A DNA stretch of 64,000 nucleotides from Amphiscolops sp. MND2022 (GCA_964187785.1 OZ076410.1:54684001-54748000); one strand, 5' to 3'. Shown: positions 11,539 to 49,780, numbered from the stretch's first letter. Numbers and translations: made by a program. The notes: generated from the sequence alone by a model not told the origin.

Positions 11539-11614
11539 GTTAGTTGTTTGAAAGTTTTAATGTTTAATGCTGCTCTTAGATTTCATATTTTTGGTCATTG
11601 AACTTTCTGTTTAG

Positions 11615-11712
11615 TTTACACTTGGCTCAGACATAGATGACCGAAGGGATGGAGCTAAAACATCCATAGGAGCAGTTCCTTCGTCACCCACCGAGCACAG
11701 AGCCAGGAAGAT
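11615..11712 (+). CDS. SLC4 gene exon
   Basis: TTAG|...|GTGAG after a 76-nt intron. Encodes FTLGSDIDD...EHRARK; phase 0 in, phase 2 out, matching the acceptor at 17399. Confidence 0.7.
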
Positions 11713-11796
11713 GTGAGATTTTTTAATTAATTATTAGTTTGAAAGATAGACAAGGCTTTTTAGATGTTTTAATAACATTGTAGATGCCTGTCATTA

Positions 11797-26729: not shown

Positions 26730-27880
26730 GTTTATGTTGTGAGTTTTCAGCTGTCAAGGTATCGCTGTTATACAGACCATCATCGAGAGATTTTTACCAT
26801 TCTATTGGTCAAATTTGGTTGATTATCATGATTTGTACCTCAAAGCCGATACATTGATTCTAGTGTGTGTTGTTGAGGAATTCCGCACGCTGTGTTATAT
26901 GACTTATGGCTTGGATGGCCCTCATTACTTCACCTACTCGCATTTGTCTGGTGCACTTCCTTGAAAAAAATGCTGTGCAGAGATAGAGCTTCTAACTTTT
27001 CGCTCTCACCTGGAAATGGTGGAAGATATGATAAGGAGCGGTGTTGCGTCAGTATTCGACAAACGATATTTCAAAGTAAACAGCAGATATGTGGCACAGC
27101 ATAAATACAACGACTATAACACCTACGGCATACTCTTGGACGCCAACAATTTATACATGAGTATCATAGAAAACTTTCCATTGCCGTTGAACAGCTTCCA
27201 GACAGTTCCAGATATAAACCTCAATAAGGTATTGAATACACCTAATGAATCGGAAGAAAGGTACATTTTAGAAGTAGACCTCCATTACCATGATAGGCTT
27301 CATGACGGACATGAAGATTTTCCGCTAGCTCCAACAAAAGAAAGATTATTTTATAAAAGTTTGGGAGCGAAGCAGCAAGAACAGTTGACACTTTTGGGCG
27401 AAAACAGACCTTTTAGTTAAAGCAAAAAACTTAGTCACTTTCGAATAAAGAAATACACTGTGCGTTATATAACACTGAAACTATATGTTAGTCTCGCTAT
27501 GGAGGTAACAAAACTTAATCATGCGTTGAAATTTAAGCAATCATATTGGCTGAGGCCCTATATGCAGCTGAACACAGAAAAAAGTAAAGAGTCACGAAAT
27601 AAATTCGAGGATAGCTTCTTCACGTTGATGATCAATTCACACTGATACTCATTCTTTTGCGAAATTAAAATTTTCAGTGAAAATCTTGCATCTATTTCAT
27701 CGCAAAAACGATCAATTTTGTGAAACAAACCAGCAAGTCAGGGCAACTGTTTTGGAATTCGCAAAGCATCACATGTTCAACTTCTACTACAACGTATTGA
27801 AAAAACACCCTGAATTGCTTTGAGCTATATTTCGATACTGACTCCTTGTTATATGAGATCAAACACAGAGACTTCTATGA
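26730..27880 (+). pseudogene. Protein-primed family B DNA polymerase (pPolB) remnant
   Basis: YHDLYLKAD, YGLDGPHYFT, MIRSGVASVFDKR, LLDANNLY, YILEVDLHY...FPLAPTKE, KFKQSYWLRPY, FFTLMINS. Confidence 0.93.
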
Positions 27881-28643: not shown

Positions 28644-29147
28644 TGTTAAACTGAGATCAATGAAAACACTGTTGGTTGAAGGTTGAATTAGAACCCACCG
28701 CCAGACATTACTGTATAAAACAGAAGTCACACATAAATAAGAGTCTACAATCTACCCCCTCCTTAAAGAGAAGAAGGCAGGCGAGAGTTTAACAAGGTTT
28801 CGAGTAATAAATCAGATAATCCACCAGCTTTCGTGAATACGTCAGCTAGCTGATTCTTTGTGTCGGTCCACTTGATAGTCACATCTTCATGAAGAATAGC
28901 ATCCTTGATGTTCATAATGTCCAAGCGTAATCTCTTCTCTGCTACGTCTTTATGAGAAGACAGTGCTACCTTCAAATCATGATTATCAGTAAAGCAAGTA
29001 ATAGAAATGTCCTTTCCCAACACATCGGATAATAAATTTCGAATAAAAATCGCATGATGCAGAGCGTCTCCAAGTGCATGACACTCTGCTGCCAACGTGC
29101 TTCTGACCACGCGCTTCAGCCGTTTAGAGCACCACGTCAACGGAACA
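28644..29147 (-). mobile_element. 5'-truncated Ty1/Copia-type element: RNase H + PPT + ~106-bp 3' LTR
   Basis: WCSKRLKRVVRSTLAAECHAL...FTDN...QLADVFTK (Copia RNase H); minus-strand PPT AAGGAGGGGG; TG...CA-bounded LTR at 28644-28749. Confidence 0.88.
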
Positions 29148-32360: not shown

Positions 32361-32674
32361 GTTTTTGTGGAAATGAACGAGTTGGTTATGGATGATTTTG
32401 GTCAAATACAGTGGAAGGAAAGAGCACGTTGGATGAAATACGAGGAAGATGTCGAATTGGGAGGAGCCTGGGGAAAACCGCACGTTTCTTCTCTTTCTTT
32501 TCATTCTTTGTTGGAACTAAGAAAACTTCTGGAGCTCGGACTACCTCTATTCGACATCCCTGAAACAACTGTGCCTGGAATTGTACACAGAATTTGTATC
32601 GCCCTTAGAGAAAGAGGAACGTTGAATGAGTACGAGGCTGAGCAAATGGAGAGTACTCTCTTGTTGACACTATC
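32361..32674 (+). CDS. SLC4A: SLC4 (AE2/AE3-like) anion exchanger, Band-3 cytoplasmic domain exon
   Basis: ACAG|VFVEMNELVMDDFGQIQWKERARWMKYEEDVELGGAWGKPHVSSLSFHSLLELRK...|GTTAGT, the canonical SLC4 W-K/E-x-A-R-W..EEDVE..WGKPHV..LSF.SLLELR motif. Confidence 0.96.
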
Positions 32675-33017
32675 GTTAGTATTAGATCAACCAGGTGTTT
32701 TCTGCTAAGAGGTGTTCATTTGCAAATCACCTAAAGAAGCATTGTTCAGAGTTGAAGTTTATGGTTTAAAATTCTAATGTTACAAATAAAGTACACTGCC
32801 TATGAATTCAAGATAAGGGGTGACTAATCCAACAACTAATATCGTTTAAAAAACCCTATTCAAGCTTCATAATTCATCTCTTTAAAGATTGTTTCACCCT
32901 CGCGGTTCCTTTTGGTTAATTTCCGCTGCTAAAAAAGTCCGCTGTTTTAACTGATTTCCGCTGCTAATCTCAATTCGGTGAAAAGTTTTATGCGAGGTCT
33001 GTCAATTTTCCTTGCAG

Positions 33018-33513: not shown

Positions 33514-33664
33514 NNNNNNNNNNNNNNNNNNNNNNNNNNNNNNNNNNNNNNNNNNNNNNNNNNNNNNNNNNNNNNNNNNNNNNNNNNNNNNNNNNNNNNN
33601 NNNNNNNNNNNNNNNNNNNNNNNNNNNNNNNNNNNNNNNNNNNNNNNNNNNNNNNNNNNNNNNN
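33514..33664. other. Assembly gap (N run)
   Basis: Run of n. Confidence 1.
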
Positions 33665-33686
33665 CTGCGGTCAATACATACATTTA

Positions 33687-35243
33687 TTAAGGGATGTGCG
33701 GTCCATCCTGGATGTGGGGTCCCCGTTGTGGGGTCAGGCCTTTTTTCGACAACAAAAAACACCTTTACAGTGATGCAAACTGTTTCCAAATGTTGCTCCA
33801 CAGGGTAACTACTCGAAGCTAGCATCAATTGCCGGTCATTAAACCGGTTTTAGTTTTAAAATCACTTCGACCCGATATCCTGTTTTTCGGAGTTCAAGGT
33901 GAAAAAAATTCGTGTCTAACACATACTCGGTCTACAAGATCCGAAGTCTCTGTTTTGTTGTTATTCTTTTTCTTCTCGTTTGTTGTTTTAAAACAGCCTA
34001 AAACCAAAAAAATGATTAGACCACGATACCTGGCTGGCCGGCCTCTCTGATGACTAACATTATATTACAAATACACATTATAATTTATACTTTTGAAGCT
34101 GTCTACATACATATCATACAGGATATCCGGTCAATACATAATTTTATTAGGGGATGTGCGGTCTTTTTTAGATGTGGGGTCACCGGTCGCGTATATGCGA
34201 TTCAAACTTTTGTCTATTTGTAACTCTTCTAAAATATTCGAAATAGTCAAAAAATATTACAAAAAAACAACGTACAAAAAAACAAAAAACATGATTGATT
34301 CATCTTTATTTTGAAATGGCATGTTCTAAATTCTTTTGAGGATTTGAATTTTTAGCTTCTCCACATGCAAGAGACTTCAGGGAAACATTATTTTGGCTTC
34401 GATTTTCGTCCGTGTCTATTTTTCTAGTTTTCTGATTTGGTTTTTGACGTTTAACATGAAATAAATATTAAGGGATGTGCGGTCCATCCTGGATGTGGGG
34501 TCCCCGTTGTGGGGTCAGGCCTTTTTTCGACAACAAAAAACACCTTTACAGTGATGCAAACTGTTTCCAAATGTTGCTCCACAGGGTAACTACTCGAAGC
34601 TAGCATCAATTGCCGGTCATTAAACCGGTTTTAGTTTTAAAATCACTTCGACCCCATATCCTGTTTTTCGGAGTTCAAGGTGAAAAAAATTCGTGTCTAA
34701 CACATACTCGGTCTACAAGATCCGAAGTCTCTGTTTTGTTGTTATTCTTTTTCTTCTTGTTTGTTGTTTTAAAACAGCCTAAAACCAAAAAAATGATTAG
34801 ACCACGATACCTGGCTGGCCGGCCTCTCTGATGACTAACATTATATTACAAATACACATTATAATTTATACTTTTGAAGCTGTCTACATATCATACAGGA
34901 TATCCGGTCAATACATAATTTTATTAGGGGATGTGCGGTCTTTTTTAGATGTGGGGTCACCGGTCGCGTATATGCGATTCAAACTTTTGTCTATTTGTAA
35001 CTCTTCTAAAATATTCGAAATAGTCAAAAAATATTACAAAAAAACAACGTACAAAAAAAACAAAAAACATGATTGATTCATCTTTATTTTGAAATGGCAT
35101 GTTCTAAATTCTTTTGAGGATTTGAATTTTTAGCTTCTCCACATGCAAGAGACTTCAGGGAAACATTATTTTGGCTTCGATTTTCGTCCGTGTCTATTTT
35201 TCTAGTTTTCTGATTGGGTTTTTGACGTTTAACATGAAATAAA
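33687..35243. repeat. Near-identical 781-bp tandem duplication
   Basis: The two copies are offset by 781 bp (e.g. GGATGTGCGGTCC at 33692 and 34473), giving the duplicate ORFs 33829/34610. Confidence 0.92.
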
Positions 35244-35705
35244 AACCGAAAAACAGGATTGATTTATCTTCATTTTGAAATGGGAAGTTCTAAATTCATT
35301 TGGGGATTTGAATGTTTAGCTTGTCCACGTGCATTAGACTTCAGGGAAAATTTATTTTGGCTTCAATTTTTGTCTGGGTTTTTGTTTTTCTATTTTTCTG
35401 ATCGGGTTTTTGTCGTACAACATAAAATAAAACCAGGAAGTCGGATTGATTTATTTTTTTTTATTTTGAAATGGGATGTTCTAAATTCATTTGGGGATTT
35501 GAAATTTTAGCTTGTCCACATGCAAGAGACTTCAGGGAAACTTTATTTTGGCTTCGATTTTTGTCCGTGTTTGTTTTTCTATTTTTCTGATCGGGTTTTT
35601 GACGTACAACATAAAATATAACCTAGAAATCGGGCTGATTTATCTTTATTTTGGAATGGCATGTTCTAAATTCATTTGAGGATTTAAATATTTAGCTTCA
35701 AATAT
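35080..35705. repeat. ~185-193 bp tandem satellite (one more unit at ~34300)
   Basis: TTTATTTTGAAATGG(C/G)A..TTCTAAATTC recurs at ~34305, 35085, 35270, 35462 and 35647. Confidence 0.85.
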
Positions 35706-35711
35706 TATATT

Positions 35712-36134
35712 NNNNNNNNNNNNNNNNNNNNNNNNNNNNNNNNNNNNNNNNNNNNNNNNNNNNNNNNNNNNNNNNNNNNNNNNNNNNNNNNNNNNNNNNN
35801 NNNNNNNNNNNNNNNNNNNNNNNNNNNNNNNNNNNNNNNNNNNNNNNNNNNNNNNNNNNNNNNNNNNNNNNNNNNNNNNNNNNNNNNNNNNNNNNNNNNN
35901 NNNNNNNNNNNNNNNNNNNNNNNNNNNNNNNNNNNNNNNNNNNNNNNNNNNNNNNNNNNNNNNNNNNNNNNNNNNNNNNNNNNNNNNNNNNNNNNNNNNN
36001 NNNNNNNNNNNNNNNNNNNNNNNNNNNNNNNNNNNNNNNNNNNNNNNNNNNNNNNNNNNNNNNNNNNNNNNNNNNNNNNNNNNNNNNNNNNNNNNNNNNN
36101 NNNNNNNNNNNNNNNNNNNNNNNNNNNNNNNNNN
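35712..36134. other. Assembly gap (N run)
   Basis: Run of n. Confidence 1.
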
Positions 36135-36600
36135 CATTAAATTGTATTATATTACAATATATTTTATTATAATAATTATTTTATTGTATTGTTTTACATT
36201 TTAATATTTTTTCTTATTTTTTATTATATTAAATTATATTGCATTTTATTATGTTATTTTATATTTTATTATATTGTTATGTTTCAAATTAAATTGTATT
36301 ATATTACAATATATTATAGTATAATAATTATATTTTTATATTATATTACATTTTATTATTTTATCGTATATTATATTATATTATATTAGATCGTATTAAA
36401 TTATATTACATTAAAGTATACTACATTTATTATTATATAATAGATTACATTATTTTAAAAGATCATTTTACATTATTATATATTATATTATACTATATTA
36501 TATTATATATTTTATTTTTTTTATATTATTTTATCATATATTTCAATTTATTATATTTTAATCTTTTATACCATGTTACATTGTACAGGATTGTATTTAA
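36135..36600. repeat. Degenerate (ATATT)n low-complexity tract
   Basis: Almost pure A/T with TATTA periodicity. Confidence 0.9.
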
Positions 36601-36671
36601 TATGTTTCGAATATTTTTCAAATCATTCTAATTCACCGTCTTCTTGATTTGCAATTGATCTGCGGAAGGGT

Positions 36672-36809
36672 TCAATTGACCTTACATCCAGTTGTATTCA
36701 ATTGATCATACATCCAGTTGGCTTCAATTTTATCATACATTGCATTTCCGACTGCATTTCCCGCCAATGCTGCAGTAAGAAATGCAAAAAGCATGCTGAG
36801 TTCTTTCAT
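36672..36809 (-). CDS. Putative 45-aa secreted peptide transcribed divergently from the SET-YR gene
   Basis: MKELSMLFAFLTAALAGNAVGNAMYDKIEANWMYDQLNTTGCKVN*: signal-peptide-like N-terminus. Below the 60-aa cutoff of the ORF track. Confidence 0.35.
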   Translation of the reverse strand: MKELSMLFAFLTAALAGNAVGNAMYDKIEANWMYDQLNTTGCKVN

Positions 36810-36904
36810 CTACAAGTTTCTTTTATTTCCGTGGCAGGAAGCAAATGTAAATTACAAGTATTATTTACTTGAGCCGATATCAACAGTTGTCCACACGTGG
36901 CTTC

Positions 36905-37140
36905 TATTAGATTGGCTGAACGAAAGCCGAGTAGTGTGTGCAGCATCAATTCACGAGAAGACAGGTCTCGAGCCGAATCAGCGGTCAACAAGTTACTTCA
37001 ATTTGATTGGCTGTGCAAAAGCCGAGTAGTGTTTGCAGCAATAATTCAACAGGAACCTGGCCACGAGTCAAAGGAAGAAAGTAAATCAGCAAGTCGGATC
37101 AGCAGTACTGATTTTTGATTGGTCAGTGGAAAGCCGAGAC
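36905..37140. promoter_or_regulatory. Triplicated promoter module: GATTGG (CCAAT box) followed by AAGCCGAG at fixed spacing
   Basis: GATTGGCTGAACGAAAGCCGAGTAGTG (~36910), GATTGGCTGTGCAAAAGCCGAGTAGTG (~37006), GATTGGTCAGTGGAAAGCCGAGAC (~37117). A strong downstream donor AAG|GTAAGT at 37308 suggests a 5'UTR exon. Confidence 0.55.
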
Positions 37141-38242
37141 AAAATTACCACTGTTTTAACAGTAAACTTAGTCGCTCAATACATTATTCTATCGTTCAGA
37201 ACAAGTTATTGGAAACCACGTTTTAACTGTAATTGTTAGTTTCAACTTTCTAAATTTACTGGAACTCAGCAATTCATTACAATTACCTGGATTGAGACAG
37301 TCAAAAGGTAAGTGATACTCTTTGATATCATACAAAGCAAACATTAAAAAAAGGAAACATGAAAATTTTCGATAATCAATCGAAGAACATTCTAAAAATC
37401 GCTTGTTCTAAAAATACAGAATAATAACTAAAATTTGAAAACAAAATTGTGTGCAATTTTGGATGGAAAATAACTGACTTTAAAATTCTAAAACTCCCTA
37501 TTTTTTATTTATTATAATTCCATGAAAGATCGTACCAACGATTGCTATTCAATATTCCTAAAATGAGGTTCCAGTTTTTTATTCAAATTGTAATTGATAT
37601 TCCAAATTTTAAAAGTACTTTGTCTTGGCGAATGGTCTGACGTTTGGATCTTTTCTGTTACTTTCCCTACCAATTTAATTCAACCCCCCAGTTAAGCAGT
37701 CAAGTGAAATTATCATTGGCTGTTACTATTAATTCAATCAAATTGCAGTATTTTATAACTCCAACTGCAACTGAAACTCATCACTGATTTTTCACTCTTA
37801 TTGTGGGGGGGGGGTTAACAGAAAAGATCCAGAAATTTTACTTTAAGGAATTTTGAAATCAATAATTAATTTTAGAAAACCAGAAAGTTCGTAATAATGA
37901 GACGAAACCGTTTAATAACTTTCAAACGAAACTGTGTCCTTCTTGCAGAGAAATTCACTGAATATTGTTTAGATTACACCGGCATATGAATTTTTCTTAC
38001 TGAACGATTAGTACGAAACATATATCTCAACCGATGGTCTCTCTGGAAACCAAGTCCGTTTTAATGGTCCCAAAAAAGATCCGAAAAATAAATTCACAAA
38101 AAACAAATATTTGAAATCAAGCAATCTTATGTGAATGTCTCACCATTTCGGAGGACTATTACAACAAACTTCGTTTTTGCTTGGGACCAATCGATTTTAA
38201 TGCTACACTTGTAATCAAAATTTAATATTATCTTTCTTTTAG

Positions 38243-39140
38243 ATGAAGACCAGTGCCCATGATGATTCGAGAAGCAAGAAACCCACTGAGTATGCAGAAC
38301 ACTTTGCCAACAACGACCCAGATTGTTTTGAATTAAAACTTGTGTCAAAATCCATTGGACTGGGAGTCTTTGCCCTCAAGGATTTCGAGAAAGGCGAGTT
38401 TTTGGTTAACTACCGTGGGCGTCTTTCCCAGGAAAACAAAGTAGGCCCTGCAATTTTTGGAATTGAGTGGCAAAACAAACGATGGACAATTGATGGAACT
38501 TCGGAGGACCAAAGCCTGGGCAGGTTCATTAATGACACGGATCCATTTCACAAACCAAATTGTGAACCTCACTTGCATTCGTTTGAACAAAATGGCGAGC
38601 CAACATGTGTCCTTTGGTTCAAGGCTATATCCCAAATCGTCAAAGGTGAGCTATCTCAAAATTTTGTACTTTTAGAGAGGCTCTCTGCTCGTGAGACACA
38701 AAGTGGCCACCTTCGGGTCTCGAAAAAGATTGAAATTATAATGTAATGAAAGAAGAAAGTTGAGAAACAATATTGGGTTCATGGTAGCATTTTTGCATCA
38801 TAGTAAAAACATTGAATTTTACCCGACTCTAAATCCCTAAGGCCCCCATGGAACCATTTATGAAAATGCATGGAACAATATGATTCCAAGCACGGAAGAA
38901 TTTGAAAGGCTTTTGAAGTTGGGGGGAATAGGTGAGAATACTATTCAGGATTGGTATAAAGAACCAACGAAATTTCAAGATTCTTTTTGCGCGGCTGTGA
39001 GAACTCCAAATCTCTCGGTACGTTTCTTCTTCGTTTCGTCATTGACATCCAAGGCTTTAAATACTCAGTGCTACTTTCTTTTTGCAGGCGAAGAGCTGCG
39101 ATACGACTACAAAAACCAATTTCAGCCATGGAAACAGCGC
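38243..39140 (+). CDS. SET domain, PR-Set7/SETD8-like, split by intron 38646-39087
   Basis: IGLGVFALKDFEKGEFLVNYRG, WTIDG, LGRFIND, PNC, LWFKA..I.KG|EELRYDY...W. Confidence 0.92.
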
Positions 39141-42100
39141 AAAAACTGGAGTAAGACAGAGAGTGGCTGGCAATTTCTCCACAATGTTCCCAAGGATGGG
39201 TCTTTTCAAGTCGAACTACCTGATTCATTGAGACATTCCCCCTTTAATCGAGACACTCCCCCTTTCGATGAAACACTCGCCCTATCAGCAACTGACCCAT
39301 TGCCAATCCTGGATGATATACAGACAGCAACTGACCCATTGTCAATGGAAGACAGTGAGGCGGTTGATGACAACAAGGAAGATCGTGTTGATCTTTTTTC
39401 ACCAATTAGGAAAAAATTGAGGGGAATGTCACTTTATGCGAAAACATTAAAAGGAAATGACGATGCTCGCTCTGTGAGTAGCAAATCAGAAACGAAATCG
39501 GGAACAATTACTCGACCAAGTACTTCCCAAACGTCTTCTTTGAAGTCAACGGAAGGTACGACAAGTAGCTCAGATAACTTCTCTGACACGTCAGCAAGTT
39601 CTAAACGATCCTCAACCGAACGCCACAGGAATCGAAACGAAAATCGTGAACAAGAGATGAGCAGCCAAAATGTGGAATCGGAATCTGAAGACCACGGTGA
39701 GGTACCAGATAACGATGACTGCTCAATTTCATCCCAATCTGAAGTTCAGGCACAACAGGACTCATCAATAGATAGCAGAATTTCACAGAGTGTAAAGCAG
39801 AATGAATCACAAATTGAATTATCTGAGAACTCACAGGTTGCAACACAGTCTTCAGGTGAAAATTCAGAAGGCAGAGCTACTGCCGTGCGTAAGGTGGCTC
39901 GGAAACGTCTTTCAACCTTAACCATCTCAGCCGCAAAAACATCTGTTCAGAAGAAACGAAAGCAATCATTTTTGCTATATGGCCTCAAAAAAACAGTAAC
40001 CAGCTTGAGCCTCCAAATTGTTCCAAAGAATATCGGAACGAAAACAAAATGGGTGAAATCAAATGAAGTAAATAATAATGTTCTAAATCAACTTCTGAGC
40101 GAAGGGCATCAAGCACAAAAAACTACGTTGTCGAAAACCCTCAGTGATATTGAGGAAGAGCCTGTCCAACCTGAACTCACTCCCAGTTGCAGCTACTCAA
40201 ATGAGGGACTCGAACGCCGTAATACCCTCTCCTCGACCCCCCTTTGTGTTGATCAACGCAGAGCCAATCTGGATGACCTTGATGAGACTGTGAGCGATCA
40301 GAAGTCGGATTCAGAGACCAGCGACGATGAAACAAATAACCATATGGATGTCGATTCCGAAAGCAGCGAATCGGAAAAAGAAAACTCTGATGAAGAAAAT
40401 AGATCCTGGGAACCCGATGAAAGTGACTTTGAAGAAACGGAACCCTTGCCGAGAAAGAAAACAAAGCTTGCAAAGGCAGTGATAGGAGCAAAAGTGGAAC
40501 TGTGCAGGCCTCAGACAAACTTAGATGCGTCATCTGATAAGCTCTCAACAGAGAGAGGTTCAATCGCAGAATCTATCTCAGATGACAGACTGAACTCGTC
40601 ATACAACTCGTCTATTAAAGTTCCTCAAGTCGATGATTGTATCGAAAACACGGCAGATGGATCTGGCATTCAAATTCTTCGACATGGTACCTACGTAACT
40701 AAACGATATCCTTGCGGAATGTGCGGTGACGGGACGTGGTTCACGAAGCCTCAACGACATTTTGTCAAGTCAGCGGAGATATCAGTTCTTAAATTTCAAA
40801 TCAAGGTTGACCTCAGATCAGGTGTTTCGAATCAAGTTCGACCTCATATCAAGTTTTTCGAATCAAGTATGACCTCAGATCAGGTGTTTCGAATCAAGTT
40901 CGACCTCATATCAGATTTTTCGAATCAAGTATGACCTCAGATCGGGTTTTCTCATCAAGTTTGACTTTAGATCGGGGTTTCTCGTGTTTGGATTCTTTAT
41001 CCTTGTTTTGAAGTTTTTCAAAAAAATGTAAAGTGCGAAAAAATAATTTCAAAAATGCCTCGCCTCTTTTCCGAAATACTATCGAACTGATAGCTCCTAT
41101 TCAGATCTCACGCAAAAAATGCGCTCTTTCAAGAAATTGAAAAATTACGAACTACAGCATCAGATCCAAAGTGTAGTGCAGGGGATAGAATGGAAACCGA
41201 AAATCAAATCAGAGTTTTACAGACAACTTTGCTCAATCAAACCGTGAAACAGCACAATGAACAAGTTATCAAGGATAAAAAAGGTAATCAATTTTTATCT
41301 TTCTTGCTCTTTTAAATTTTATAGTCGACTAAATGCTGTCATTTCTGAGTTGTGTTACCAACTAAGTATTTGATGTTTGACAGGAGTGCTCGTACCAGTG
41401 AGACTACCACCACCGGATGCTAACGTCAATGCCAACGACTTTACCTTCTGCTTAAAATGTCAAGGACTATTTACCAAAAAAGGAATTACAGAACACATGA
41501 GATTAAGTTGTATCCACAAAACAAAGGCAGCTATTGGACACAGGTCATTTTTGAAAGAAGATGTACAGAAGCTACTTCTTCAACACGACACAGATCAGTC
41601 AGAAGATTTACAGGAAATGTTAGGCGAGCTAAGGGACGACGAGATTGGGAAAGCAATCAGAAAAGACCGCCTTCTTCTCTATATTGGATCCATTTTGATC
41701 CGACGAAGAACTGCTGATGAAGACAATAAAACAATTCGTAACCGTTTGCGATATCTGGCTAAAATCGTAGTCGGGTGTAAAAGAGAGAACCTTTGCCGGT
41801 GCCTTTTTGCTAGTGAGCTGGATAGTGTATACGAAGTTTTAAACACATTTACACCTTCTGTTCGTATACGAATGGGGCAGCTTCTCAGGAGCGCAATGGA
41901 GCTCATGAAATCCATCGCGATTAAGAAAGATGACTCCAAAATGGCGAATGCGATGACTAACTCCATCGCTGTGCATGACGCCGAATTCAAGCATCAAGTT
42001 GGTCATAAAGCAACAATGGAACAGGAGAAAGAGAAGTTCATGGGGAATTACGACATTTTACCCCTGAGCAAAGATATCAAAATGCTAGCAGAACACCTCG

Positions 42101-43786
42101 AGGAAGAATGTCAATGCTGCATCGAGGCATATGAAGGTGGGCACAAAAATGCAAAAAGGTTGGGATTGGAGAAATGTCCTTTGATTGTACATTGTCATCA
42201 AGGTGTTACAAAACAAACACAAGTCCATTGTTAACCTTTGTTACATTTTGCTTTACTTCACATCCAAAACTGCTCTTGCTGAGAATAAGGGACATCAATA
42301 ATCCTGATTCGAAGTTTTTGAGCGACGAACGTACTGTTTTTCCTCCGCTCTTTTTCATGAATTAAGCTAACAATTTTAAAATTTATTTTTTTTTATTATT
42401 CGGAAAAAACAGGAAGAGAATTCTTTTTTGTCGTAAGAAACTCATGAAATGAATCTCCAATCCCTGTACAACAGGTCCAAAAAAATACTGGCAAGCAGAG
42501 TTGTTTTGTTCAACAAAAGGAGAGGAGGAGAGTTCGTCAAATCAACTCGGAGGGATATTGAGTATGCTTTGCAATTCCACCGAGGTGTCAGTCACGACAT
42601 TGCCGAGTTTCAAGAAATTTTAACTGACCTGGAGAAGCATTTGGCGTCTCAAATGAAGCTTCTAAGGCTTCCCGGGAAACAGGGAAAAGGAATACCAGTT
42701 CTTCTGGATCAACCTAACCAAAAACTTCTCAAATTTTTAATGGAGGACCCTGACCTCAAAACGGAACGGATTCTTTTCCAAAGTGGCAATCGCAGGCCTT
42801 TACACAGCCACAATATTTTGAGTCAGATAACGAAAGAAGTTCCAGGATTAGAAAAACCTGAAGTGTTGCGTGCCACAGCGATGCGAAAGTATTGTGCGAC
42901 TGCATTACAGGTACAGATATTTTTCAATAACCCTATGTGTTGTTTTAAATTTAGAGTTTATATTTAGAGCTTTATGTTTGAAGTCACTCTGTATGAACTT
43001 TCAAGCATCTTTTCAAATTGAAATCGTACGCACTTCCACAAAATTGACAAGAAAACAATTTCAAACACTAACAATTCAGAAATTTACATCGATCTTTTTT
43101 TGTCAAGAAGCTTTTTCTCTCGGTTGCTTTGTGTGACATCAAATACAAGTTGCTTTTCTGTTGTTTCACAGATGATGGAGCTGCCAAAGCACCAAAAAGC
43201 ATGGGTTGCTGAACATTTGGGCCACTCTCTTGATGTTCATGGAAAATACTACAGAATGCCCCTGGACTCTGTTGAGACTGCAAAGATTACAAAGCTCATG
43301 TATTTGATGGACCACTGCAAGATGAACGAGGTTCGAGGCCTCAATTTGAATGAAGTCGACACTGTCATCACTCGCGACAGAATACTTCAGTGTACCGATG
43401 AAAGAGACTACGAGGATCAACTACCTGACATCTTTGACAAAAGTAACTTGGATCGTTGTTCAAAGCACGTCGACGATGAAGCCCAAAGTGACATTGCCCG
43501 CAAACACTCCAAAATTGAAAGGGGAGAACCTTTGGCCCGGAGAAAACAGAAAGATGGGAAACGTTCGTAATGGCCACCTGACCAAGAACGCAAAGTTATC
43601 GAATTATTTCAAAATTTTATCGCCAATAAACAATGCCCGAACAAGGCTCAGTGTGAAGAGTATCTCCATCTATTTCCTCACTGTGAAGGAAAATACCAAC
43701 AACTGAAAGAAAAGGTTAATAACCTAATGACCAAAGGAGAACCAAGGAAGGATTCGCGAAAGAAACAAGCAGAAGATGATGAGTGA
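38243..43786 (+). CDS. Six-exon SET methyltransferase / Zn-finger / tyrosine recombinase / Myb-like fusion gene (~1362 codons, one in-frame TAA at 43568)
   Basis: Exons 38243-38645, 39088-40768, 41105-41283, 41384-42158, 42475-42910 and 43172-43786 are all GT-AG and phase-consistent (1,2,1,2,0), totalling 4089 nt. The splices rebuild KG|EELRYDY, QRHFVK|SH, KKG|VLVP, AKR|SKK and ALQ|MMEL. Confidence 0.9.
40799..40983. repeat. 31-bp intronic tandem repeat x6, alternating variants
   Basis: AATCAAG(T/G)(T/A)(T/C)GACCTCA(G/T)ATCAG...TTCG units at 40799, 40830, 40861, 40892, 40923 and ~40954. Confidence 0.88.
42475..43290 (+). CDS. Tyrosine recombinase catalytic domain (exons 5-6)
   Basis: LFNKRRGGE (42509-42532, catalytic Arg), LPGKQGK (Lys), LRATAMRKYCAT (HxxR-equivalent), WVAEHLGHSLDVHGKYY (His 43223, Tyr 43247/43250). 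Confidence 0.9.
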
Positions 43787-46689
43787 TTTTCCTGAATAGA
43801 ACTTCAACTCCATATTCATATACCATGATCGAATCGCTTAACTTGAACCAGCCCCACACGTAATTTTTGTTTAAAAAATTCAGTTACACATTACACAAGT
43901 GGTTCAAATTAAGATGTTTTACATTATTTAGAAAATCGATTTACTTTACAAGGGTCTGTGTACTCATTACAAAAAACTACAGTAACAATTTCTGATTTTT
44001 TATAGTAAAAAAAATTACGTGTGGGGGAAGGAGGAAAGTCTCTGTTTGAAGTTTCTGAGATGTGATTCTGTTTTTTGTGCTGTTTTAAAATGTGCCTTTA
44101 GGCGCTTTCAAAAAAATTCTTTCAGTTCAAGGAATTTCGTCACCTGGAAAAAATTCGAAAACTTACAAATGAAAGAATACCTACATACAATGAATTTTTC
44201 GAAAATTCGTTTTGGTTAAACAAATTTTGTCACCTGAAAACTTTGAAAAAAAATCCAAATGAAAAGGTGCCTTAATACATTGGATTTGTTTTAGTCCAAC
44301 GAAACGTTTCACATTGTGGAAATTATATAGTGGATTTGTTTTATATGATTTTTGTTTTGCATCATTTAGATGCATTGGTGTTTTGCATCATTTAGATTTT
44401 AGATTAATTGGAATTTTTCCGAACATGGAAATCTTTCGTTTCTTCTCATATCACAGTAGTTTTCCTCGAGTTTTTGGAAACATTGTTTAAGAGTACCATT
44501 TCAGTTGTTTCCAAATTACATGCGGATGTGCGGTCCACACATGAAAAAACAGCGGACCGCATTTCCCAGGTTTCGGAGCTGTCATTTTAAACATACTTTG
44601 ACCGCATATATGGTGACCCCATATTGGCCTCAATGCGCTCGTGTGTGCGGGTATCTTTTTGCAGGTGTAGACGACCGTAGCAGGTTGAGCTATTTTTAGC
44701 CATTTTATGCCATGCAAGAGGGTGACTGGTGGATGGTTAGCCACGAGCCAGCGCGGCGGCGGATGGGTCAAACCGTGTGTTGAAGACTTTTTAACTCCCA
44801 TTTCGCGTAGAGACGTCCCACAGGTATGGTTTTTAATGGACTGCAAGTGCAAGAGTAGACAATGCTAATGGTCTAAACCGCGTGTCTGTATCTGGTCTAA
44901 ATGTGGAAAAAAAGCGTGGCGAAGATGCACCCCCTGTGACTGGAGGTGTCGCTCAGATGGCTCATGGTTGGCGAAATTTTTGAAAATGCACCTGTTCCGA
45001 CGGGAATTTGTTGGTGCAGGTAAGTAACGTTTTTTCGCGAATGTAACGATACCCTATGAAGTGTTTTCTTGCGAAAAAGAGCAATTTTGAGAAAATCTCA
45101 TTACTGGTGTTTTTGTGTTTTTCTTGGGTTTGAGCACACTCGTGCTCACTGAAACCTGGAGAAACAAAAGTGTTGTAAACAGCAACTACAAGGCTCGAGG
45201 AAGCTAGCACAAGGTGCCCAAGGCACCATTTTTTCTTTTGTTTGTAAAAAAAGTGCCGATGTTATGCCAGAAAAATGCAAAAAAGTGGAAAAAGGGTCAT
45301 AAGAGTACCCAAAAACACAAGTGTACTCACGTGTAAAAGCATGAAAAGTCGCTGTACAGTAGTTCCTCGAGCAGAACTAACCTACAGAGCACTAATTACA
45401 ACTTTTACAGCGGATTCAGGCAGCCTGAGGTTGATATTGTGTGCAAAACTTGCAATTTTAGGCATTTTCAGACATTCAATAGTGCATTGTCCGTCAGTCT
45501 TTGGAGTAAAGCTTAGTCGGCAGTGGGGAACCTGTGTATCCTCATTTTCAGTTAATGCAGTAAAAATAACGTGTGGTAGTGAACACCGCATGTGAAAACT
45601 CACGTTCAGTGCTGAGAAAAGTGAAAAAACGCACTGAATTTGATCAATTTTCCACAAAACTGGGTCAGTGACTCCTGAACCCTAGCCAAAAAAGGTTGCA
45701 TTTTCGTAATTACCACTAAACTGAACGTTATTGGCGAAACTGTGGTGAGCGTATCGGTAATTAAAGTCCAGAAAAGCTCTCTGACGTTTCGACATCAGAG
45801 AAGCAAAAAAACGCAAAAAAATCCAAAATTGCAGGACTGTCAGTGCCTTGTACCTAACACGCACAACCAATTGAGGGTTTGTCCCAGTGCTACGGATAGT
45901 GGGGCAACACGTTGGTCCCATTTTGCCTGCCGTACCACTTTCTGAGGTGACCCTCGTGGTCAATTTGTAAAAAAGTTCCCAAAAATAGTGTTTTTCCGTG
46001 AAAAGTGTCCATACTGGGTCGAAACCTTAGGTAAGCCAGCGCGCTTCATTTCGACCATATAGTGACATTGTGGGCACTCACTGGCACATGCTACTAAGTT
46101 TGGTGTCGACCTGTGCAGTACTTGTTGAGAAAACAGCGAAAACGTGACACCCAAAAAAGTGTGCAAAAAAGCAGTTTTTTCTTCGTTTTTCCGAGCAACT
46201 CAGGCACCTTAGCCGAAGAATGGGGCTTTACTGTAGCCCACCATCGTAACTGGTGCTAGTTCTTACGCTGTTGCAGAGCAATTGAGCTCGCTAAGTCTTT
46301 CCAATGAATCGCAAGTTTGAAATAGACGTGAAAAACAGTGTATTCAGGTTCCGAGTGATACCGCACGTCTGTACCCAGGTGAAGTTGTGTGGAAAGGACA
46401 CAGCTCAAAACTGTGTTCTTTTCACTAAACCTAAGTGTACCTAGGATTGGCGCTTCCAGTGCGCACACGAGCCACTTAAGTGTTATTGTGGAATTTTTGG
46501 AAAATCCAAAATTTCTTTGAAAATCTTCCTGCTGGTGCCTGAATATAAAATATCATAAACCAGGTCAATGTTCTGGCGCAGTGTGCTTATGGGATAGTGC
46601 TGTGCAAGTTTGAATGGCCTACTAGCCTTAAAACGTGTTTTGGAAAGCTTCAGCCATTGAAAAACGCCATTTCTCGTAAGTCATCACCG

Positions 46690-47920
46690 GAACGAGTAAG
46701 GAGCTACCCTTAAAGGAGGCCCCGGTTGTCTTCGGAAACCTACTCCAGGCCAGGACTCAGGCCTTACTCTCAAGCCAGCACGCCTGCTGATTGTAACGAA
46801 CAACATCACGGCGCTGCAGAGGTCAGTTCAGGAGGGATTGCAAGTCAGTGATCAATTGTGAACTGCTCAGGAACTACAAATTGTTCGAGTGGAAGCGATG
46901 GGTCATCGCCTGGGTGAAATGAACGATTTGCTGCTTCAGCGCGAATTACGTGTTGAGACCCAGATCTACAACTTGAGCAATCAAATTAACTCCGTGCTCA
47001 ATGCTAGTGACGCTCTGCGCAGAGAAAAGTTGCTCCCAAGATCTGGGGAGGGGGTAACGGCTGGGAGTTCTTCCGCCAGTACTTCGGTGAAACCAAATCT
47101 GGAGAAACCCAATCCGGCTGGCATGATGAAACCTATCTTGGCTGGGAATATGAAGCCCAGCACTTCTAGACCCGCTACCCAGGTCAGGATCAAGGAGCCA
47201 GTGCTCGCCATGCCTGATACTGAGCACAAGCCTGCACGAGTGCAAATGAACGAACCTCATGACTCTAGTTCAGCCGTGCAATCCACTGTGATTTTGACTA
47301 GTACTCGGGACCAAGGCGTGGACCCTGTCACTATCAATCTGGATTCTTCTACTAAAGCTGATTTATCAAGTACCAATGATACTTTGGGATCTCAAACTGA
47401 TGATGCCGCGTATGTGTCGGCGCAGGCTATGCTATCTGGACCGAGTTCCTTATATCTGACTGCAGATAATGGAGTGCCCTCAGGCAAACCCTGTGCGAGC
47501 AGCACTCGCAAGAAGGAGCAGGAGACCATGGACTTGTCTGTTCAGGCCACCCAAAGTAGTGACGACGCAACACGTGATCTGGAACCGAAGGAGGAATTTG
47601 AAGTTATCGCCACTGAGCAATTAAGATTTTACAGCCGCTATCTCAAATGCCATGTCTAAAGAGTTAGCTCTCTTGTTAGTAGGCAGGGATTTGGCGCAAA
47701 CGAGGCCTAGCGTGTATCGAGGCTCGAAGGATGGGTCCATCGATGGGTGGATTCTGGTAATGCGGAGATATCTGAAGCAAACCCAATTAAAAGCTACGTT
47801 GGATGATCAAGCTTGGACCATTATTGGACATCTTGAAGGTGAAGCTCACAACTATATCATCAATAATGCTGAGTCTGAACGCCACACCCCAGAGAAAGTA
47901 TTCGAATTTTTGCGATTAAT
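46690..47920 (+). pseudogene. Ty3/Gypsy gag remnant
   Basis: Coiled-coil and Ser/Pro-rich N-terminus, then RPSVYRGSKDGSIDGWILVMRRYL...WTIIGHLEGEAHNYI...PEKVFEFL (capsid-like), cut off abruptly at ~47920. Confidence 0.75.
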
Positions 47921-49780
47921 GAAGGAACCTAATCGCGACCACATATTCCTCAGGACCAGGAGGTCTCCGTGGGTCTGGATGAAATCCCCAACTAAACTTA
48001 GTTGGGTGCGGGATTGGGACTTCTGGGTGACGAGCGCGGTGGTAGTCCCTATGATGAAATCCTCATAAAAGGGAAGTCGTTTCCGTAATATCCACAAGCT
48101 CTGCGTGGATGAATTTGGGAAGTTCTTTGGCCAACTCGATCTTCGTGGCTAATTTCCCATTGAGCCCGCGGACACGATTCTAAACTCTTCCAATGACTGT
48201 GTCGACAGTTTTTAAATGTTCAACCTTTGATTGTGTCTCAAGTGTCGTTCCGGACGGTGGTGCCGAAGAATCTCCACAGTTCCCTTCGTCTTGATGGAGA
48301 AATTCTTTTTACATATATGACACCATACCATGTGAGGGTTCTGAATGGGGTCTGCTGGTCCAGAGATGAAAGAGTGAGTCCAGCCGATCTTCGCGAATAT
48401 TTCTTACCGCATGGGAACTCCTCTCTTGGATGGTTGCCTGGCCGGTTTGGTCTTCTTATTTCAAGCCGGACCAGGGCCCTTAGTCCCTTTTGCTTCTGCC
48501 TGCAACTCCAAGAGAGTAGTGTCCTGGCTACTACATTCAGTAGTCTCTCCCCCTTCAGTCAACTGTTCAGTGGGAACAGCGGAAGCTCTTGCGGGTTCTT
48601 GGGCCGTCCCTGCGGATCTTTTGAAAGACTCAGAAATTAGAGCCTTTTCAGTCGCACTGTCGCTCTCAGCATAGAATTAGGACTCGTCCATGTCTCTTGC
48701 TCCTTCAGTCCCAGTTTTAGGGTGTGCATCACTGTCTGAGTCTGAAGAACTCCAGCCTCTGCTACTGATAGGTCCAGGGGTCTATGCTCGTTCTCGGGAT
48801 CAAAAGTGGGCAGTTCTTGACGGAGCTGTTGTAGGGGTTCCTCTGACAGCATCAATGACCATCCTCTCCATAAACATGTACGACATCTTGATCGTCTCGT
48901 CTGTTAAGACTCTCAGGAAGTTAAGCACTTGGGACTGGGCGAAGGCAATGACTGGGTGCCCTTCTGTAAGCCTAAATGCATATGTCTCTTCAAAGTATCT
49001 TTTGAGAAGCGCCCTGCTACGGCCGGAAAGTTGTGGGAGGCTGTCCAGGTCTATCGTGGCAGTAGGGTCAGTTGTCCTCTATGCGTCACGTTGTGGAGCT
49101 CCAAGTCCTGATTCATTTCCTCCTTCGGTCCCTGACTCTGAGTCGACAGGATTTCGGCCATAAAGCTAGAAACTGTCTATTTGAAAGTCTTCTTCAGAAC
49201 TTTCGGCCTCACCTTGAATACCGAAAAAAGAACTCTTGGTTGCCCACCTGGCAGCGATGGGACGTCACACACGGAGGAGACGTTAGCATCCTCGGTTGGC
49301 GCGGGAACAGAAACTGTGCCTTCTGGATTGGAGGCAGTTGTTGTCAAGAGCTCGGGAAGTTGCGAATCAGGGTCAATAGCCACTTTATTGGCACTCATGT
49401 CAGCTTCTGTGTCATCTTCACAACCGGGTAGGATGGAGTACAAGATCTTCTAATCCCGGAACTGCCAGATTCTTGGGTAGGACTTTGAGGTCCTTGGGCT
49501 CCTTTGGGACTTGCATCGACTGGCTGTTGGACAACTTCTTGAACATCTTCTTGTGTTCGCTCCATTCTCTGTACGACGGCTTCAGCATAAGCAGTCACGT
49601 CAGGCTCACTTTCTTGACTATAAGGAAAGAAAGCAGATAAGAGCTTGCTCTGAGATTGACCATTAGGGGATCTTGACTCAGTAGGGTTGTCAATTGGGGA
49701 CGGTGTTGGTTCAGCAGCATTTTTCGTTGTTTGATTCTCTGAACAGAAAGGAATGAAAATAGGGTTCCTTGAAAGAAATC
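47920..49780 (-). pseudogene. Decayed antisense ORF of unknown function next to the Gypsy gag
   Basis: Minus-strand coding-like stretches (DLDSLPQLSGRSRALLKRYFEETYAFRLTEGHPVIAFAQSQVLNFLR...; LATKIELAKELPKFIHAEL), interrupted by stops and frameshifts. Confidence 0.4.

What the first reader, a model, noticed from the sequence alone, without database searches (positions are those of the whole stretch)
38243..43786. Intron-containing gene fusing a histone SET methyltransferase to a tyrosine recombinase: candidate chromatin-writing mobile element
Seen in sequence: six GT-AG exons splice in frame to ~1360 aa. The order is SET (GLGVFA/YRG/RFIND/ELRYDY), a ~500-aa Ser/acidic linker, a C2H2 (CGMC...HFVKSH), an HNxxV..G motif, a CxxC...H...C finger, a helical region, the YR core (FNKRRGGE, GKQGK, TAMRK, HLGH, YY) and a Myb/SANT-like tail. 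Established: R-K-HxxR-H/W-Y defines tyrosine recombinases, which mobilise Cryptons, DIRS and fungal Starships; PR-Set7-type SET domains methylate histone H4K20. Inference: this is the mobilising gene of a DNA element that could write chromatin marks at its own or its target loci. It does not match the simple YR-only Crypton layout as I know it. From memory, similar SET+YR proteins occur as uncharacterised loci in various animals, so the protein family may be known while the element biology is not.
Basis: partly seen in the sequence, partly recalled or inferred. Interest (0 to 1): 0.92.

Follow-up and report, generated by a model that had tools for sequence, protein, structure and literature searches.

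The report
Jumping gene with histone-methyltransferase-recombinase fusion
This is one slightly broken copy of an 11 kb jumping DNA element of an invertebrate, whose single gene joins a tyrosine recombinase (DNA cut-and-rejoin enzyme) to a histone H4K20-type SET domain; I found no paper describing this layout, and similar proteins have been published as ordinary 'KMT5A-like' host genes.

Summary
The gene is real. Six GT-AG exons encode an N-terminal KMT5A/PR-Set7-like SET domain, a disordered linker of about 500 aa, two zinc fingers and a complete two-domain tyrosine recombinase (YR).

Two corrections:
- As encoded the protein has 1290 aa, not about 1360. An in-frame TAA at 43568-43570, private to this copy, cuts off the conserved C-terminal domain.
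- The exon 4/5 junction is 42158|42475.

The YR fold was tested on an intron-less homologue (AlphaFold2 pLDDT 89). The best structural matches are XerH, Cre, lambda Int and XerC/D.

The gene lies in a repeat unit of about 11 kb, from roughly 20 nt inside the N run ending at 33664 to 44647. I found five more copies at 84-99% identity and three copies of a sister sub-family. The ends are shared, the flanks are unrelated, and every other copy carries stops, frameshifts or deletions. The unit has no reverse transcriptase and no terminal inverted repeats. A 10-nt motif sits in opposite orientation just inside each end.

SET is as constrained as the YR (Ka/Ks about 0.12 between sub-families). In all element-borne copies it reads N-D where SET enzymes have N-H.

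Verdict: a Crypton-like YR DNA transposon with a fused SET domain. Chromatin writing is untested, and no RNA data were available. The scan has already reported the same architecture on other pieces of this genome.

The parts
33665..44647 (+). The whole repeat unit (element), about 11.0 kb. The true left end lies an estimated 14-20 nt to the left, inside the N run 33514-33664, and was not read.
   Evidence: Homology to L001, L002 and L005 starts at the first readable base after the N run and ends at 44642-44647. Among the other copies the left end is shared 14-20 nt further out. The right end is shared by six copies with six unrelated flanks.
33694..33721 (+). Left subterminal pair of the 10-nt motif ATRTGCGGTC. 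It recurs at 34154/34172, 34475/34493 and 34931/34949 within the duplicated left arm.
   Evidence: 21 matches in the window against 2.8 expected. Copies in the left arm lie on the + strand. The same arrangement is seen in the divergent sub-family copy L003.
33665..35245 (+). Tandem duplication of about 780 nt of the left arm (33665-34465, then 34466 onward). L001 has one unit.
   Evidence: L001:3090-3888 matches 33665-34465, and L001:3110-4356 matches 34466-35711.
35071..35698 (+). 186-nt tandem array (3.4 units) in the non-coding 5' part of the element.
   Evidence: Tandem Repeats Finder. The array is present in the other copies and much longer in L006.
38243..38645 (+). Exon 1: start codon and most of the SET domain (aa 1-134). 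An acceptor-like site directly before the ATG suggests an upstream non-coding exon (inference).
   Evidence: Pfam SET E=6.8e-7. Best solved relatives are KMT5A/SET8. The sequence was read directly.
39088..40768 (+). Exon 2: end of the SET domain (GEELRYDY...PW), a Ser/acidic linker of about 500 aa, and the first half of zinc finger 1 (CGMC...H).
   Evidence: In-frame splice. SET continuity matches KMT5A and Amphiura P0114. The linker evolves fast, pN/pS 0.62.
41105..41283 (+). Exon 3: end of zinc finger 1 (HFVK|SH) and a long helix carrying the HNEQV motif.
   Evidence: Both junctions are gapless against the intron-less homologue P0014.
41384..42158 (+). Exon 4: CCHC-type finger (CLKC...H...C, about 41449-41511) and the helical core-binding domain of the recombinase.
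   Evidence: Model residues 198-330 match the N-terminal domains of XerH and Cre.
42475..42910 (+). Exon 5: first part of the catalytic domain, with R1028/R1029 (FNKRRGGE), K1081 (GKQGK) and R1150 (TAMRK).
   Evidence: 310 library proteins match at E<=0.001. These are conserved columns of the family alignment.
43172..43570 (+). Exon 6: H1176 (HLGH) and Y1184/Y1185 (KYY, the nucleophile by spacing), ending in the premature TAA at 43568-43570.
   Evidence: Junction 5/6 is continuous in L003 and P0014. The TAA is private to this copy. The collapsed DNA contigs read T at 43570.
43571..43786 (+). Cut-off C-terminal domain, 71 codons plus TGA, open in the same frame behind the stop. It is a conserved three-helix domain, W..DE...V...F...I....P.K..C.....W..IK..V.N.
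   Evidence: It is found at the C-end of many family members. The model has three helices at pLDDT 72. No significant fold or Pfam match.
44526..44624 (-). Right subterminal motif cluster: ATRTGCGGTC on the - strand at 44555, 44600 and 44615, and one + copy at 44526.
   Evidence: The terminal 94 nt is the only 3' non-coding part still alignable with sub-family L003, at 82%, and L003 has the same - strand copies.

Best explanation
The locus is a copy of an autonomous-type, Crypton-like tyrosine-recombinase DNA transposon of about 11 kb in an invertebrate genome. It is nearly complete but disabled at its 3' end.

Its single intron-containing gene encodes one multidomain protein:
- a SET8/PR-Set7-like SET domain;
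- a disordered linker;
- two zinc fingers;
- the core-binding and catalytic domains of a tyrosine recombinase;
- a small C-terminal three-helix domain, lost in this copy through a private nonsense codon.

Shown here:
- the fold;
- the catalytic residue set R, K, (T for the first H), R, H, Y;
- multicopy status with shared ends in unrelated flanks;
- absence of reverse transcriptase, LTRs and terminal inverted repeats;
- retention of the introns in the five other same-sub-family copies compared;
- purifying selection on both the SET and YR parts.

Inferred:
- The recombinase binds the oppositely oriented ATRTGCGGTC motifs just inside each end. It then excises the element as a circle and re-integrates it by strand exchange, as proposed for Cryptons and shown for bacterial integrative elements.
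- The SET domain, tethered to the recombinase, either methylates a nucleosomal lysine (H4K20-like) or holds the H4 tail. This would couple recombination to chromatin, through target choice, repair or replication coupling, or control of the element's own expression.
For: Gene model.

SET domain: Pfam E=6.8e-7 and KMT5A as best solved relative.

YR fold: the AlphaFold2 model of homologue P0014:60-665 (37% identical and colinear with window aa 654-1229) has pLDDT 89.
- Foldseek hits in PDB are XerH, Cre, XerA, the Tn1549 integrase and lambda Int, all at probability 1.00.
- VIA-align gives Z 12 over both domains.
- The top 30 Swiss-Prot matches are XerC, XerD or XerH, plus one archaeal integrase/recombinase.
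- Pfam Phage_integrase is hit weakly by 7 of 81 family members.

Mobile unit:
- Five further copies at 84-99% identity and three of a 71-80% sister sub-family lie on different contigs.
- The right end is common to six copies with six different flanks. The left end is common to three copies with three different flanks.
- All other copies carry stops, frameshifts or deletions.
- The unit holds no other ORF.
- The end motif is enriched and inverted in both sub-families.

Selection, window versus L003: SET Ka/Ks 0.12. For the YR, pN 0.13 against a saturated pS of 0.88.

The same SET+YR architecture occurs in echinoderm proteins and in AlphaFold DB clusters.
Against: - No excision product, empty site or new insertion was observed.
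- No RNA data support the junctions or expression. The four runs found were DNA contigs.
- Every copy examined is damaged, so present-day activity is unproven.
- Target-site structure is unsettled. One copy has an 8-bp flanking direct repeat (GTTCAATA), one sits in (TG)n and one shows nothing. An 8-bp duplication would suit a DDE transposase better than a recombinase.
- The YR fold was tested on a homologue, not on the window's own spliced protein.
- The first His of the catalytic set is Thr or Ser across the family.
- The SET domain has N-D where SET enzymes have N-H, so it may not be a methyltransferase.
- No hit to DUF3504 (CryptonA) or DUF3435 (CryptonF/Starship) in Pfam.
Confidence: 0.8

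Rival explanations
1. A host gene family. The SET+YR genes would be domesticated, expanded 'KMT5A-like' chromatin regulators, as proposed for Hydractinia, Hydra and sea urchin, and this locus would be one paralogue or pseudogene.
For: - The gene has introns, and the coding sequence is under purifying selection between sub-families.
- A published study reports dozens of N-terminal-SET 'KMT5A-like' genes with conserved C-terminal ends. Many are switched on in embryos (PMC10368294).
Against: - What is repeated is an 11 kb block with 4.6 kb of non-coding 5' sequence and 0.9 kb of 3' sequence, not a gene. It ends at the same bases in unrelated flanks.
- Copies differ by 1-16% and decay freely.
- The ends carry conserved inverted motifs.
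- The catalytic recombinase residues are kept. In contrast, domesticated Crypton genes lack most of them (Kojima and Jurka 2011).
Confidence: 0.07
2. A passenger. The 11 kb unit would be moved in trans by another enzyme, for example a hAT-like DDE transposase, and the SET-YR gene would be cargo.
For: - Copy L002 is flanked by an 8-bp direct repeat, and L001 is compatible with one.
- Subterminal short repeats are also typical of hAT and Mutator elements.
- MULE-like ORFs exist in the window.
Against: - The ends share no terminal inverted repeat of more than 5 nt.
- L005 has no duplication.
- Two sub-families keep both the YR reading frame under strong constraint and the same end motifs. That is expected if the YR itself propagates the unit.
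Confidence: 0.06
3. A YR retrotransposon remnant (DIRS, Ngaro or PAT type) that has lost its reverse transcriptase.
For: Those are the commonest YR elements of animals. Another YR-coding repeat ('X') abuts copies L001 and L003.
Against: - The unit has no RT or RNase H ORF, no inverted or split terminal repeats, and no internal complementary region.
- The five other copies of the same sub-family keep the same introns, which argues against passage through spliced RNA.
Confidence: 0.03

Closest known systems
Crypton DNA transposons (Goodwin 2003; Kojima and Jurka 2011, PMC3212892)
   Same: - The element is a DNA element with introns, whose only mobility enzyme is a tyrosine recombinase.
- It has no RT, LTRs or terminal inverted repeats.
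- Animal Cryptons likewise show no terminal repeats.
- Accessory domains fused or added to Cryptons are known: GCR1_C, C48 peptidase and a mariner DDE.
   Different: - No SET domain is reported in any Crypton group.
- This YR matches neither DUF3504 (CryptonA) nor DUF3435 (CryptonF/Starship) in Pfam.
- It carries two N-terminal zinc fingers and a C-terminal three-helix domain, whereas animal Cryptons are described as lacking a C-terminal domain.
- The unit is long (11 kb).
- Placement relative to Repbase CryptonA, CryptonI or CryptonV could not be tested.
'Novel KMT5A-like' genes with N-terminal SET domains in Hydractinia, Hydra and Strongylocentrotus (PMC10368294)
   Same: - The SET8-type SET domain is N-terminal and followed by a long protein with a conserved C-terminal part.
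- There are tens of divergent, dispersed copies per genome.
- AlphaFold DB entries named 'SET domain-containing protein' and 'SETD8-A' share the ZnF+YR module. I read their accessions as sea urchin and oyster.
   Different: That paper treats them as host H4K20 methyltransferases and never mentions a recombinase or a mobile element. I did not align those particular genes, so identity with this family is likely but not proven here.
KMT5A / PR-Set7 / SET8 (H4K20 monomethylase)
   Same: It is the best sequence relative of the SET domain. The GxG, Y..G, N and ELxYDY...PW positions are kept.
   Different: The SET domain is N-terminal rather than C-terminal. The N-H pair is N-D in every element-borne copy checked. 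Identity is low (E about 1e-6).
SETMAR (SET + mariner transposase) and the fungal KDZ transposons linked to TET/JBP genes
   Same: These are precedents for a chromatin or DNA modifier physically joined to, or carried by, a transposon (my own knowledge, not checked here).
   Different: SETMAR is a single domesticated primate gene with a DDE transposase. Here the fusion sits inside a multicopy element and is joined to a tyrosine recombinase.
Xer/Cre/lambda-Int recombinases and the Tn916/Tn1549 integrases
   Same: The two-domain fold and catalytic motif spacing match; LGH followed 8-9 residues later by Y is the same spacing as in XerD (the XerD spacing is from my own knowledge).
   Different: Identity is 10-17%. 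There are extra zinc fingers, a SET domain and an eukaryotic intron-containing gene. The first catalytic His is Thr/Ser.

Membership tests
Tyrosine recombinase superfamily | Two-domain fold: helical core-binding domain plus catalytic domain | tested here: met
   The model of homologue P0014 has pLDDT 89. Matches are XerH (Z 12.2, 272-297 aligned residues), Cre and lambda Int. Window exons 4-6 align colinearly with P0014. The window's own spliced protein was not folded.
Tyrosine recombinase superfamily | Catalytic R-K-H-R-H/W-Y set | tested here: met
   R1028/R1029, K1081, R1150, H1176 and Y1184/Y1185 are present and fall in conserved family columns. The first His is Thr in the window (TAMR) and Thr in most of the family (consensus STxLRKY). 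Residues were assigned by motif and spacing, not by superposition.
Tyrosine recombinase superfamily | DNA cleavage and strand exchange through a 3'-phosphotyrosine intermediate | not testable with these tools
   This needs biochemistry.
Crypton | YR as the sole mobility enzyme, with no reverse transcriptase | tested here: met
   There is no other ORF of 60 aa or more with coding character in the 33665-38242 part of the unit, and the called genes of L001 show none with a Pfam hit apart from SET. The five other copies of the same sub-family keep the same introns.
Crypton | Dispersed copies with discrete ends, and no TIR or LTR | tested here: met
   Ends are shared in unrelated flanks. The longest inverted match between the ends is 4-5 nt, and the terminal 400 nt share no long repeat.
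Crypton | Short (4-6 bp) direct repeats at both termini as crossover sites (fungal and stramenopile Cryptons) | tested here: inconclusive
   L002 has the 8-bp repeat GTTCAATA, L001 has (TG)n on both sides and L005 has none. Animal Cryptons are reported without terminal repeats.
Crypton | YR groups with CryptonA (DUF3504-like), CryptonF (DUF3435), CryptonS or CryptonI | tested here: not met
   None of 81 family members hits DUF3504 or DUF3435 at E<=0.1. A language-model search places DUF3435 clusters nearby, at score 0.89-0.90. Comparison with Repbase sequences was not possible, so CryptonI or CryptonV membership stays open.
Crypton | Excision as a circle and re-integration | not testable with these tools
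   The only read data available were assembled DNA contigs, which showed no joints.
KMT5A/PR-Set7-type SET methyltransferase | SET fold with GxG, catalytic Tyr (ELxYDY) and a C-terminal PW | tested here: met
   Pfam SET E=6.8e-7 and alignment to KMT5A. GLGVFA, YRG and ELRYDY...PW are present.
KMT5A/PR-Set7-type SET methyltransferase | Conserved N-H pair of the cofactor pocket (RLINHS in KMT5A) | tested here: not met
   The motif is RFINDT in the window family and in L003, and RLVNDD or KFVNDE in the echinoderm SET+YR proteins.
KMT5A/PR-Set7-type SET methyltransferase | Methylation of H4K20 | not testable with these tools
   This needs an enzyme assay.
DIRS/Ngaro/PAT YR retrotransposons | RT/RNase H gene and inverted or split terminal repeats | tested here: not met
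Myb/SANT domain (C-terminal tail) | Three-helix bundle with a significant profile or fold match | tested here: inconclusive
   Three helices are predicted at pLDDT 72. The best Foldseek E-value is 4.8, and there is no Pfam Myb hit.

The most novel reading that the evidence does not exclude
The SET domain is an active, or histone-tail-binding, part of the transposition machinery of an ancient, metazoan-wide lineage of Crypton-like elements. The recombinase would then read or write an H4K20-type mark where it acts. On this reading, the 'KMT5A-like gene expansions' published for cnidarians and echinoderms are families of these transposons rather than host chromatin regulators.
Probability: 0.3. 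Interest if true: 0.8.

Novelty: new variant of a known kind. Interest (0 to 1): 0.6.

Why it matters
- Transposons that carry their own chromatin enzyme are rare. A SET domain fused to the recombinase, kept under purifying selection and present in several animal phyla, suggests that chromatin is part of how these elements choose sites or survive.
- It would also change the reading of published 'expanded H4K20 methyltransferase' gene sets in Hydractinia, Hydra and sea urchin. At least some of these may be transposon genes.
- It adds an unclassified recombinase family, matching neither DUF3504 nor DUF3435, with candidate binding sites. That gives a tractable system for studying eukaryotic YR transposition.

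Tried and rejected
1. My first exon 4/5 junction (42136|42438) spliced in frame but left a 5-aa gap against P0014 and L003. I replaced it with 42158|42475.
2. A sequence profile of the ZnF+YR module against PDB gave only zinc-finger noise. Pfam on single exons found nothing for the YR part.
3. The Pfam DUF7635 hit in the linker (26.2 bits, below the cut-off of 27) was disregarded as low-complexity.
4. RNA-seq check of the junctions failed. The four runs returned under 'rna' were DNA assemblies with contigs up to 164 kb, introns present and no joints.
5. I looked for a second gene (JmjC and others, as earlier notes report for other pieces of this genome) in 33665-38242 and found none.
6. Search for terminal inverted or long direct repeats found none.
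7. The Myb/SANT test of the tail was inconclusive.
8. The attempt to name the organism through the neighbouring SLC4 exon returned only unnamed ENA ORFs.
9. Literature searches for SET plus Crypton or tyrosine recombinase found no description.
10. The left terminus lies in the window's N run. I used only coordinates, match/mismatch strings and the other loci's own flanks.

Full report
**1. What is in the sequence**

The + strand between 38243 and 43570 holds six open segments joined by GT-AG introns of 100-442 nt. My first model gave 1295 aa. Comparison with an intron-less sister copy (L003) and an intron-less homologue (P0014) showed that exon 4 runs on to 42158 and exon 5 starts at 42475. 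That removes a 5-aa gap and gives a gapless match (EAYEGGHKNAKRSKKILASR against ENYQSGKKDSKRAKKILASR).

The exons are 38243-38645, 39088-40768, 41105-41283, 41384-42158, 42475-42910 and 43172-43570, giving 1290 aa. P0014 is a 665-aa ORF on a 2.7 kb contig. It aligns colinearly with residues 654-1229 at 37% identity (E=2e-123), without gaps at junctions 2/3, 3/4 and 5/6. Junction 1/2 is supported by continuity of the SET domain (...IVKG|EELRYDY...PW), as in KMT5A and in the Amphiura protein P0114.

**2. The stop**

The 71 codons behind it are open in the same frame. The five other copies aligned at this site (L001-L005) carry a Tyr codon there, and the collapsed DNA contigs of the same organism read T at 43570. 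The stop is therefore a private lesion of this copy.

It removes a C-terminal domain found at the end of many family members, with consensus W..DE...V...F...I....P.K..C......W..IK..V.N. AlphaFold2 predicts three helices (pLDDT 72). Neither Pfam nor Foldseek (best E 4.8) links it to Myb/SANT, so that label stays open.

**3. The SET domain**

Exon 1 hits Pfam SET (E=6.8e-7). Its best solved relatives are all KMT5A/SET8 (E about 2e-6). GLGVFA, YRG, N97 and ELRYDY...PW correspond to KMT5A positions.

The canonical N-H pair (RLINHS) reads N-D (RFINDT). The same N-D is present in the other copies that keep exon 1 intact at that position. It is also in the divergent sub-family copy L003 and in three echinoderm SET+YR proteins (RLVNDD, KFVNDE). 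It is therefore an old, conserved state of this SET lineage, not decay. Whether it still allows methyl transfer cannot be told from sequence.

**4. The recombinase**

Exon 5 alone finds 310 proteins at E<=0.001 in the 1.8-billion-protein library. An alignment of 81 relatives shows a conserved module of about 550 aa:
- a C2H2-like finger;
- a long helix with the motif G...HN..V;
- a CCHC finger (PC..C......LW.H...C);
- the YR motifs ILFNKRR.GE, GKRGR.VPVLL, ST.LRKY.AT and LGHD..VHR.FYR.

Sequence methods barely see a recombinase. There is no PDB hit, and Pfam Phage_integrase is matched weakly by only 7 of 81 members, best E 0.002.

The structure is clear. The AlphaFold2 model of P0014:60-665 has pLDDT 89.2 and pTM 0.78.
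- Foldseek in PDB ranks XerH, Cre/Tre, XerA, the Tn1549 integrase, lambda Int, IntI and XerD, then type IB topoisomerases, first, at probability 1.00.
- VIA-align gives Z 12.2 for XerH, with 272-297 aligned residues. These span model residues 176-556, which covers both the core-binding and the catalytic domain.
- In Swiss-Prot models the top 30 are XerC, XerD or XerH, plus one archaeal integrase/recombinase.

In the window protein the catalytic set is R1028/R1029, K1081, R1150, H1176 and Y1184/Y1185. The first His is Thr, as in most of the family. The LGH-to-Tyr spacing equals that of XerD (my knowledge). The fold was tested on a homologue, because a spliced protein cannot be passed by reference.

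**5. It is a repeat unit, not a lone gene**

The exon 4 ORF has eight relatives of 75-98% identity. Most lie on different contigs of one ENA assembly, and its own 90% cluster holds 42 sequences. I fetched nine loci.

- L001 is 98.7% identical to the window. L002, L005 and L009 are 92-94% identical and L004 is 84-90% identical.
- In L001, L002 and L005 the homology starts at 33665, the first base after the N run. It ends at 44642-44647 in all five.
- L003, L006 and L007 form a sister sub-family, 71-80% identical in coding parts.
- The right end (...GCGCTCGTTGGTG) is followed by six unrelated flanks.
- Among L001, L002 and L005 the left end is shared 14-20 nt beyond the position that equals 33665, again with three unrelated flanks.
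- In the window this left end falls inside the N run 33514-33664. I did not read the corresponding letters in other copies.

The unit is therefore about 11.0 kb. It consists of 4.6 kb of non-coding 5' sequence, the gene, and 0.86 kb of 3' sequence. The 5' part holds a tandem duplication of about 780 nt peculiar to this copy, a 186-nt tandem array and (ATTAT)n. It holds no other gene.

All other copies are damaged:
- L001 has a stop inside HLGH..YY.
- L002, L004, L005, L009, L006 and L007 have several stops or frameshifts. L005 lacks exon 1. L004 and L007 carry nested insertions.

The four runs found for the region are DNA assemblies. Their contigs keep the introns and break at variable sites, as expected for a repeat.

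**6. The ends**

There is no terminal inverted repeat (longest inverted match 4-5 nt) and no long terminal direct repeat.

The 10-nt motif ATRTGCGGTC occurs 21 times in the window against 2.8 expected. The + strand pairs lie just inside the left end (33694/33712, repeated in the duplicated arm). The - strand copies lie just inside the right end (44555, 44600, 44615).

The divergent L003 shows the same picture, with 14 matches against 0.9 expected. Its + copies are 17-90 nt from the left end and its - copies 23-92 nt from the right end. The terminal 94 nt is also the only 3' non-coding part still alignable between the sub-families. These motifs are good candidates for recombinase-binding sites (inference).

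Target structure is unsettled. L002 is flanked by the 8-bp direct repeat GTTCAATA, L001 by (TG)n on both sides, and L005 by nothing alike.

One observation remains unexplained. In L001 and L003 the left flank is the same other repeat, 95% identical up to the junction. That repeat itself encodes a recombinase 37% identical to this one and ends in ...CCGACCAAGTGCGGATTCTCACACA(TG)n. L003 has the same 20-mer inverted 7 nt beyond its right end. This hints at insertion next to, or into, sites of related YR elements, but I could not resolve it.

**7. Selection**

| Region (window vs L003) | Result |
|---|---|
| SET | pN/pS 0.23 (Ka 0.144, Ks 1.19, Ka/Ks 0.12) |
| Zinc-finger part | pN/pS 0.28 |
| YR | pN/pS 0.15, with pS saturated at 0.88 |
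| C-terminal part | pN/pS 0.23 |
| Linker | pN/pS 0.62 |

The SET domain has thus been as constrained as the recombinase while the element lineages diverged.

**8. Relatives and literature**

SET+YR proteins occur in Amphiura filiformis (P0114, P0163) and Apostichopus japonicus (P0162), all named 'uncharacterized protein'.

AlphaFold DB clusters with the same ZnF+YR module (TM up to 0.77) include entries named 'SET domain-containing protein', 'Histone-lysine N-methyltransferase SETD8-A', 'C2H2-type domain-containing protein' and 'Tyr recombinase domain-containing protein'. The tool hid the organisms; the taxa I give for them elsewhere rest on my reading of the accession numbers. The ESM Atlas lists clusters from arthropods, chordates and cnidarians, some with SET in 79-92% of members. 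DUF3435 clusters are the nearest named family, at score 0.89-0.90.

Kojima and Jurka 2011 list GCR1_C, C48 peptidase, DDE and HTH as Crypton accessory domains, but no SET. They describe animal Cryptons as lacking terminal repeats and a C-terminal domain.

A 2023 paper on Hydractinia embryos reports 65 'KMT5A-like' genes, mostly with N-terminal SET domains. It also reports 24 in Hydra and 61 in sea urchin, with conserved C-terminal ends, and interprets them as host H4K20 methyltransferases. It contains no mention of recombinase, integrase or mobile elements. I found no paper joining SET and a YR transposon.

Earlier notes of this scan report the same architecture on other pieces of this genome, some with an added JmjC gene. 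This unit has no JmjC.

**9. Verdict**

The best explanation is a Crypton-like YR DNA transposon whose recombinase is fused to a SET8-like domain. This copy keeps all catalytic motifs but has lost its C-terminal domain.

The mobile-element reading is well supported. The mechanism (circle excision, motif binding) is inferred by analogy, and the chromatin-writing role is untested.

It is a new variant of a known kind. The protein family is already in databases and has been noticed in print, but not as a transposon.

Noticed in passing
window 32367-32708 (+): An exon-like ORF of an SLC4/Band-3 anion exchanger (Pfam Band_3_cyto) lies about 940 nt left of the element. The element may sit in an intron of that host gene, but I did not look for downstream exons.
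   Followed up: partly
L001:716-3070 and L003:1-2347; L003:13068-13085: Another YR-coding repeat ('X', 37% identical recombinase) abuts the left end of two copies from different sub-families. It ends in a 20-mer plus (TG)n, and the same 20-mer is inverted just past the right end of L003. This may be an att-like site or nested YR elements.
   Followed up: partly
window 14989-15893 (+), 27016-27420 (+), 28763-29140 (-), 46889-48068 (+): By eye these ORFs look like a MULE transposase, a B-family DNA polymerase (Polinton/Maverick-type), a Copia-type pol C-end and a retrotransposon gag. The window is rich in transposons.
   Followed up: no
window 40794-40981: A 31-nt tandem repeat (6 units) fills most of intron 2, and its length varies between copies.
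   Followed up: no
L004:8692-14726 and L007:2305-5737: Nested insertions inside the element carry long ORFs of 975 aa and 744 aa. They were not identified.
   Followed up: no
L003:9887-10801 and 11048-11749: The sister sub-family lacks introns 4 and 5 of the window copy and has an intron at a different place (after GEFQ). Intron gain or loss has therefore happened within the element family.
   Followed up: partly
window 38100-43900: Assembler word depth of the DNA contigs rises from about 210 at the 5' end of the gene to 700-900 at the 3' end in run X1. This suggests more 3' fragments than full copies, but no single-copy baseline was available.
   Followed up: no
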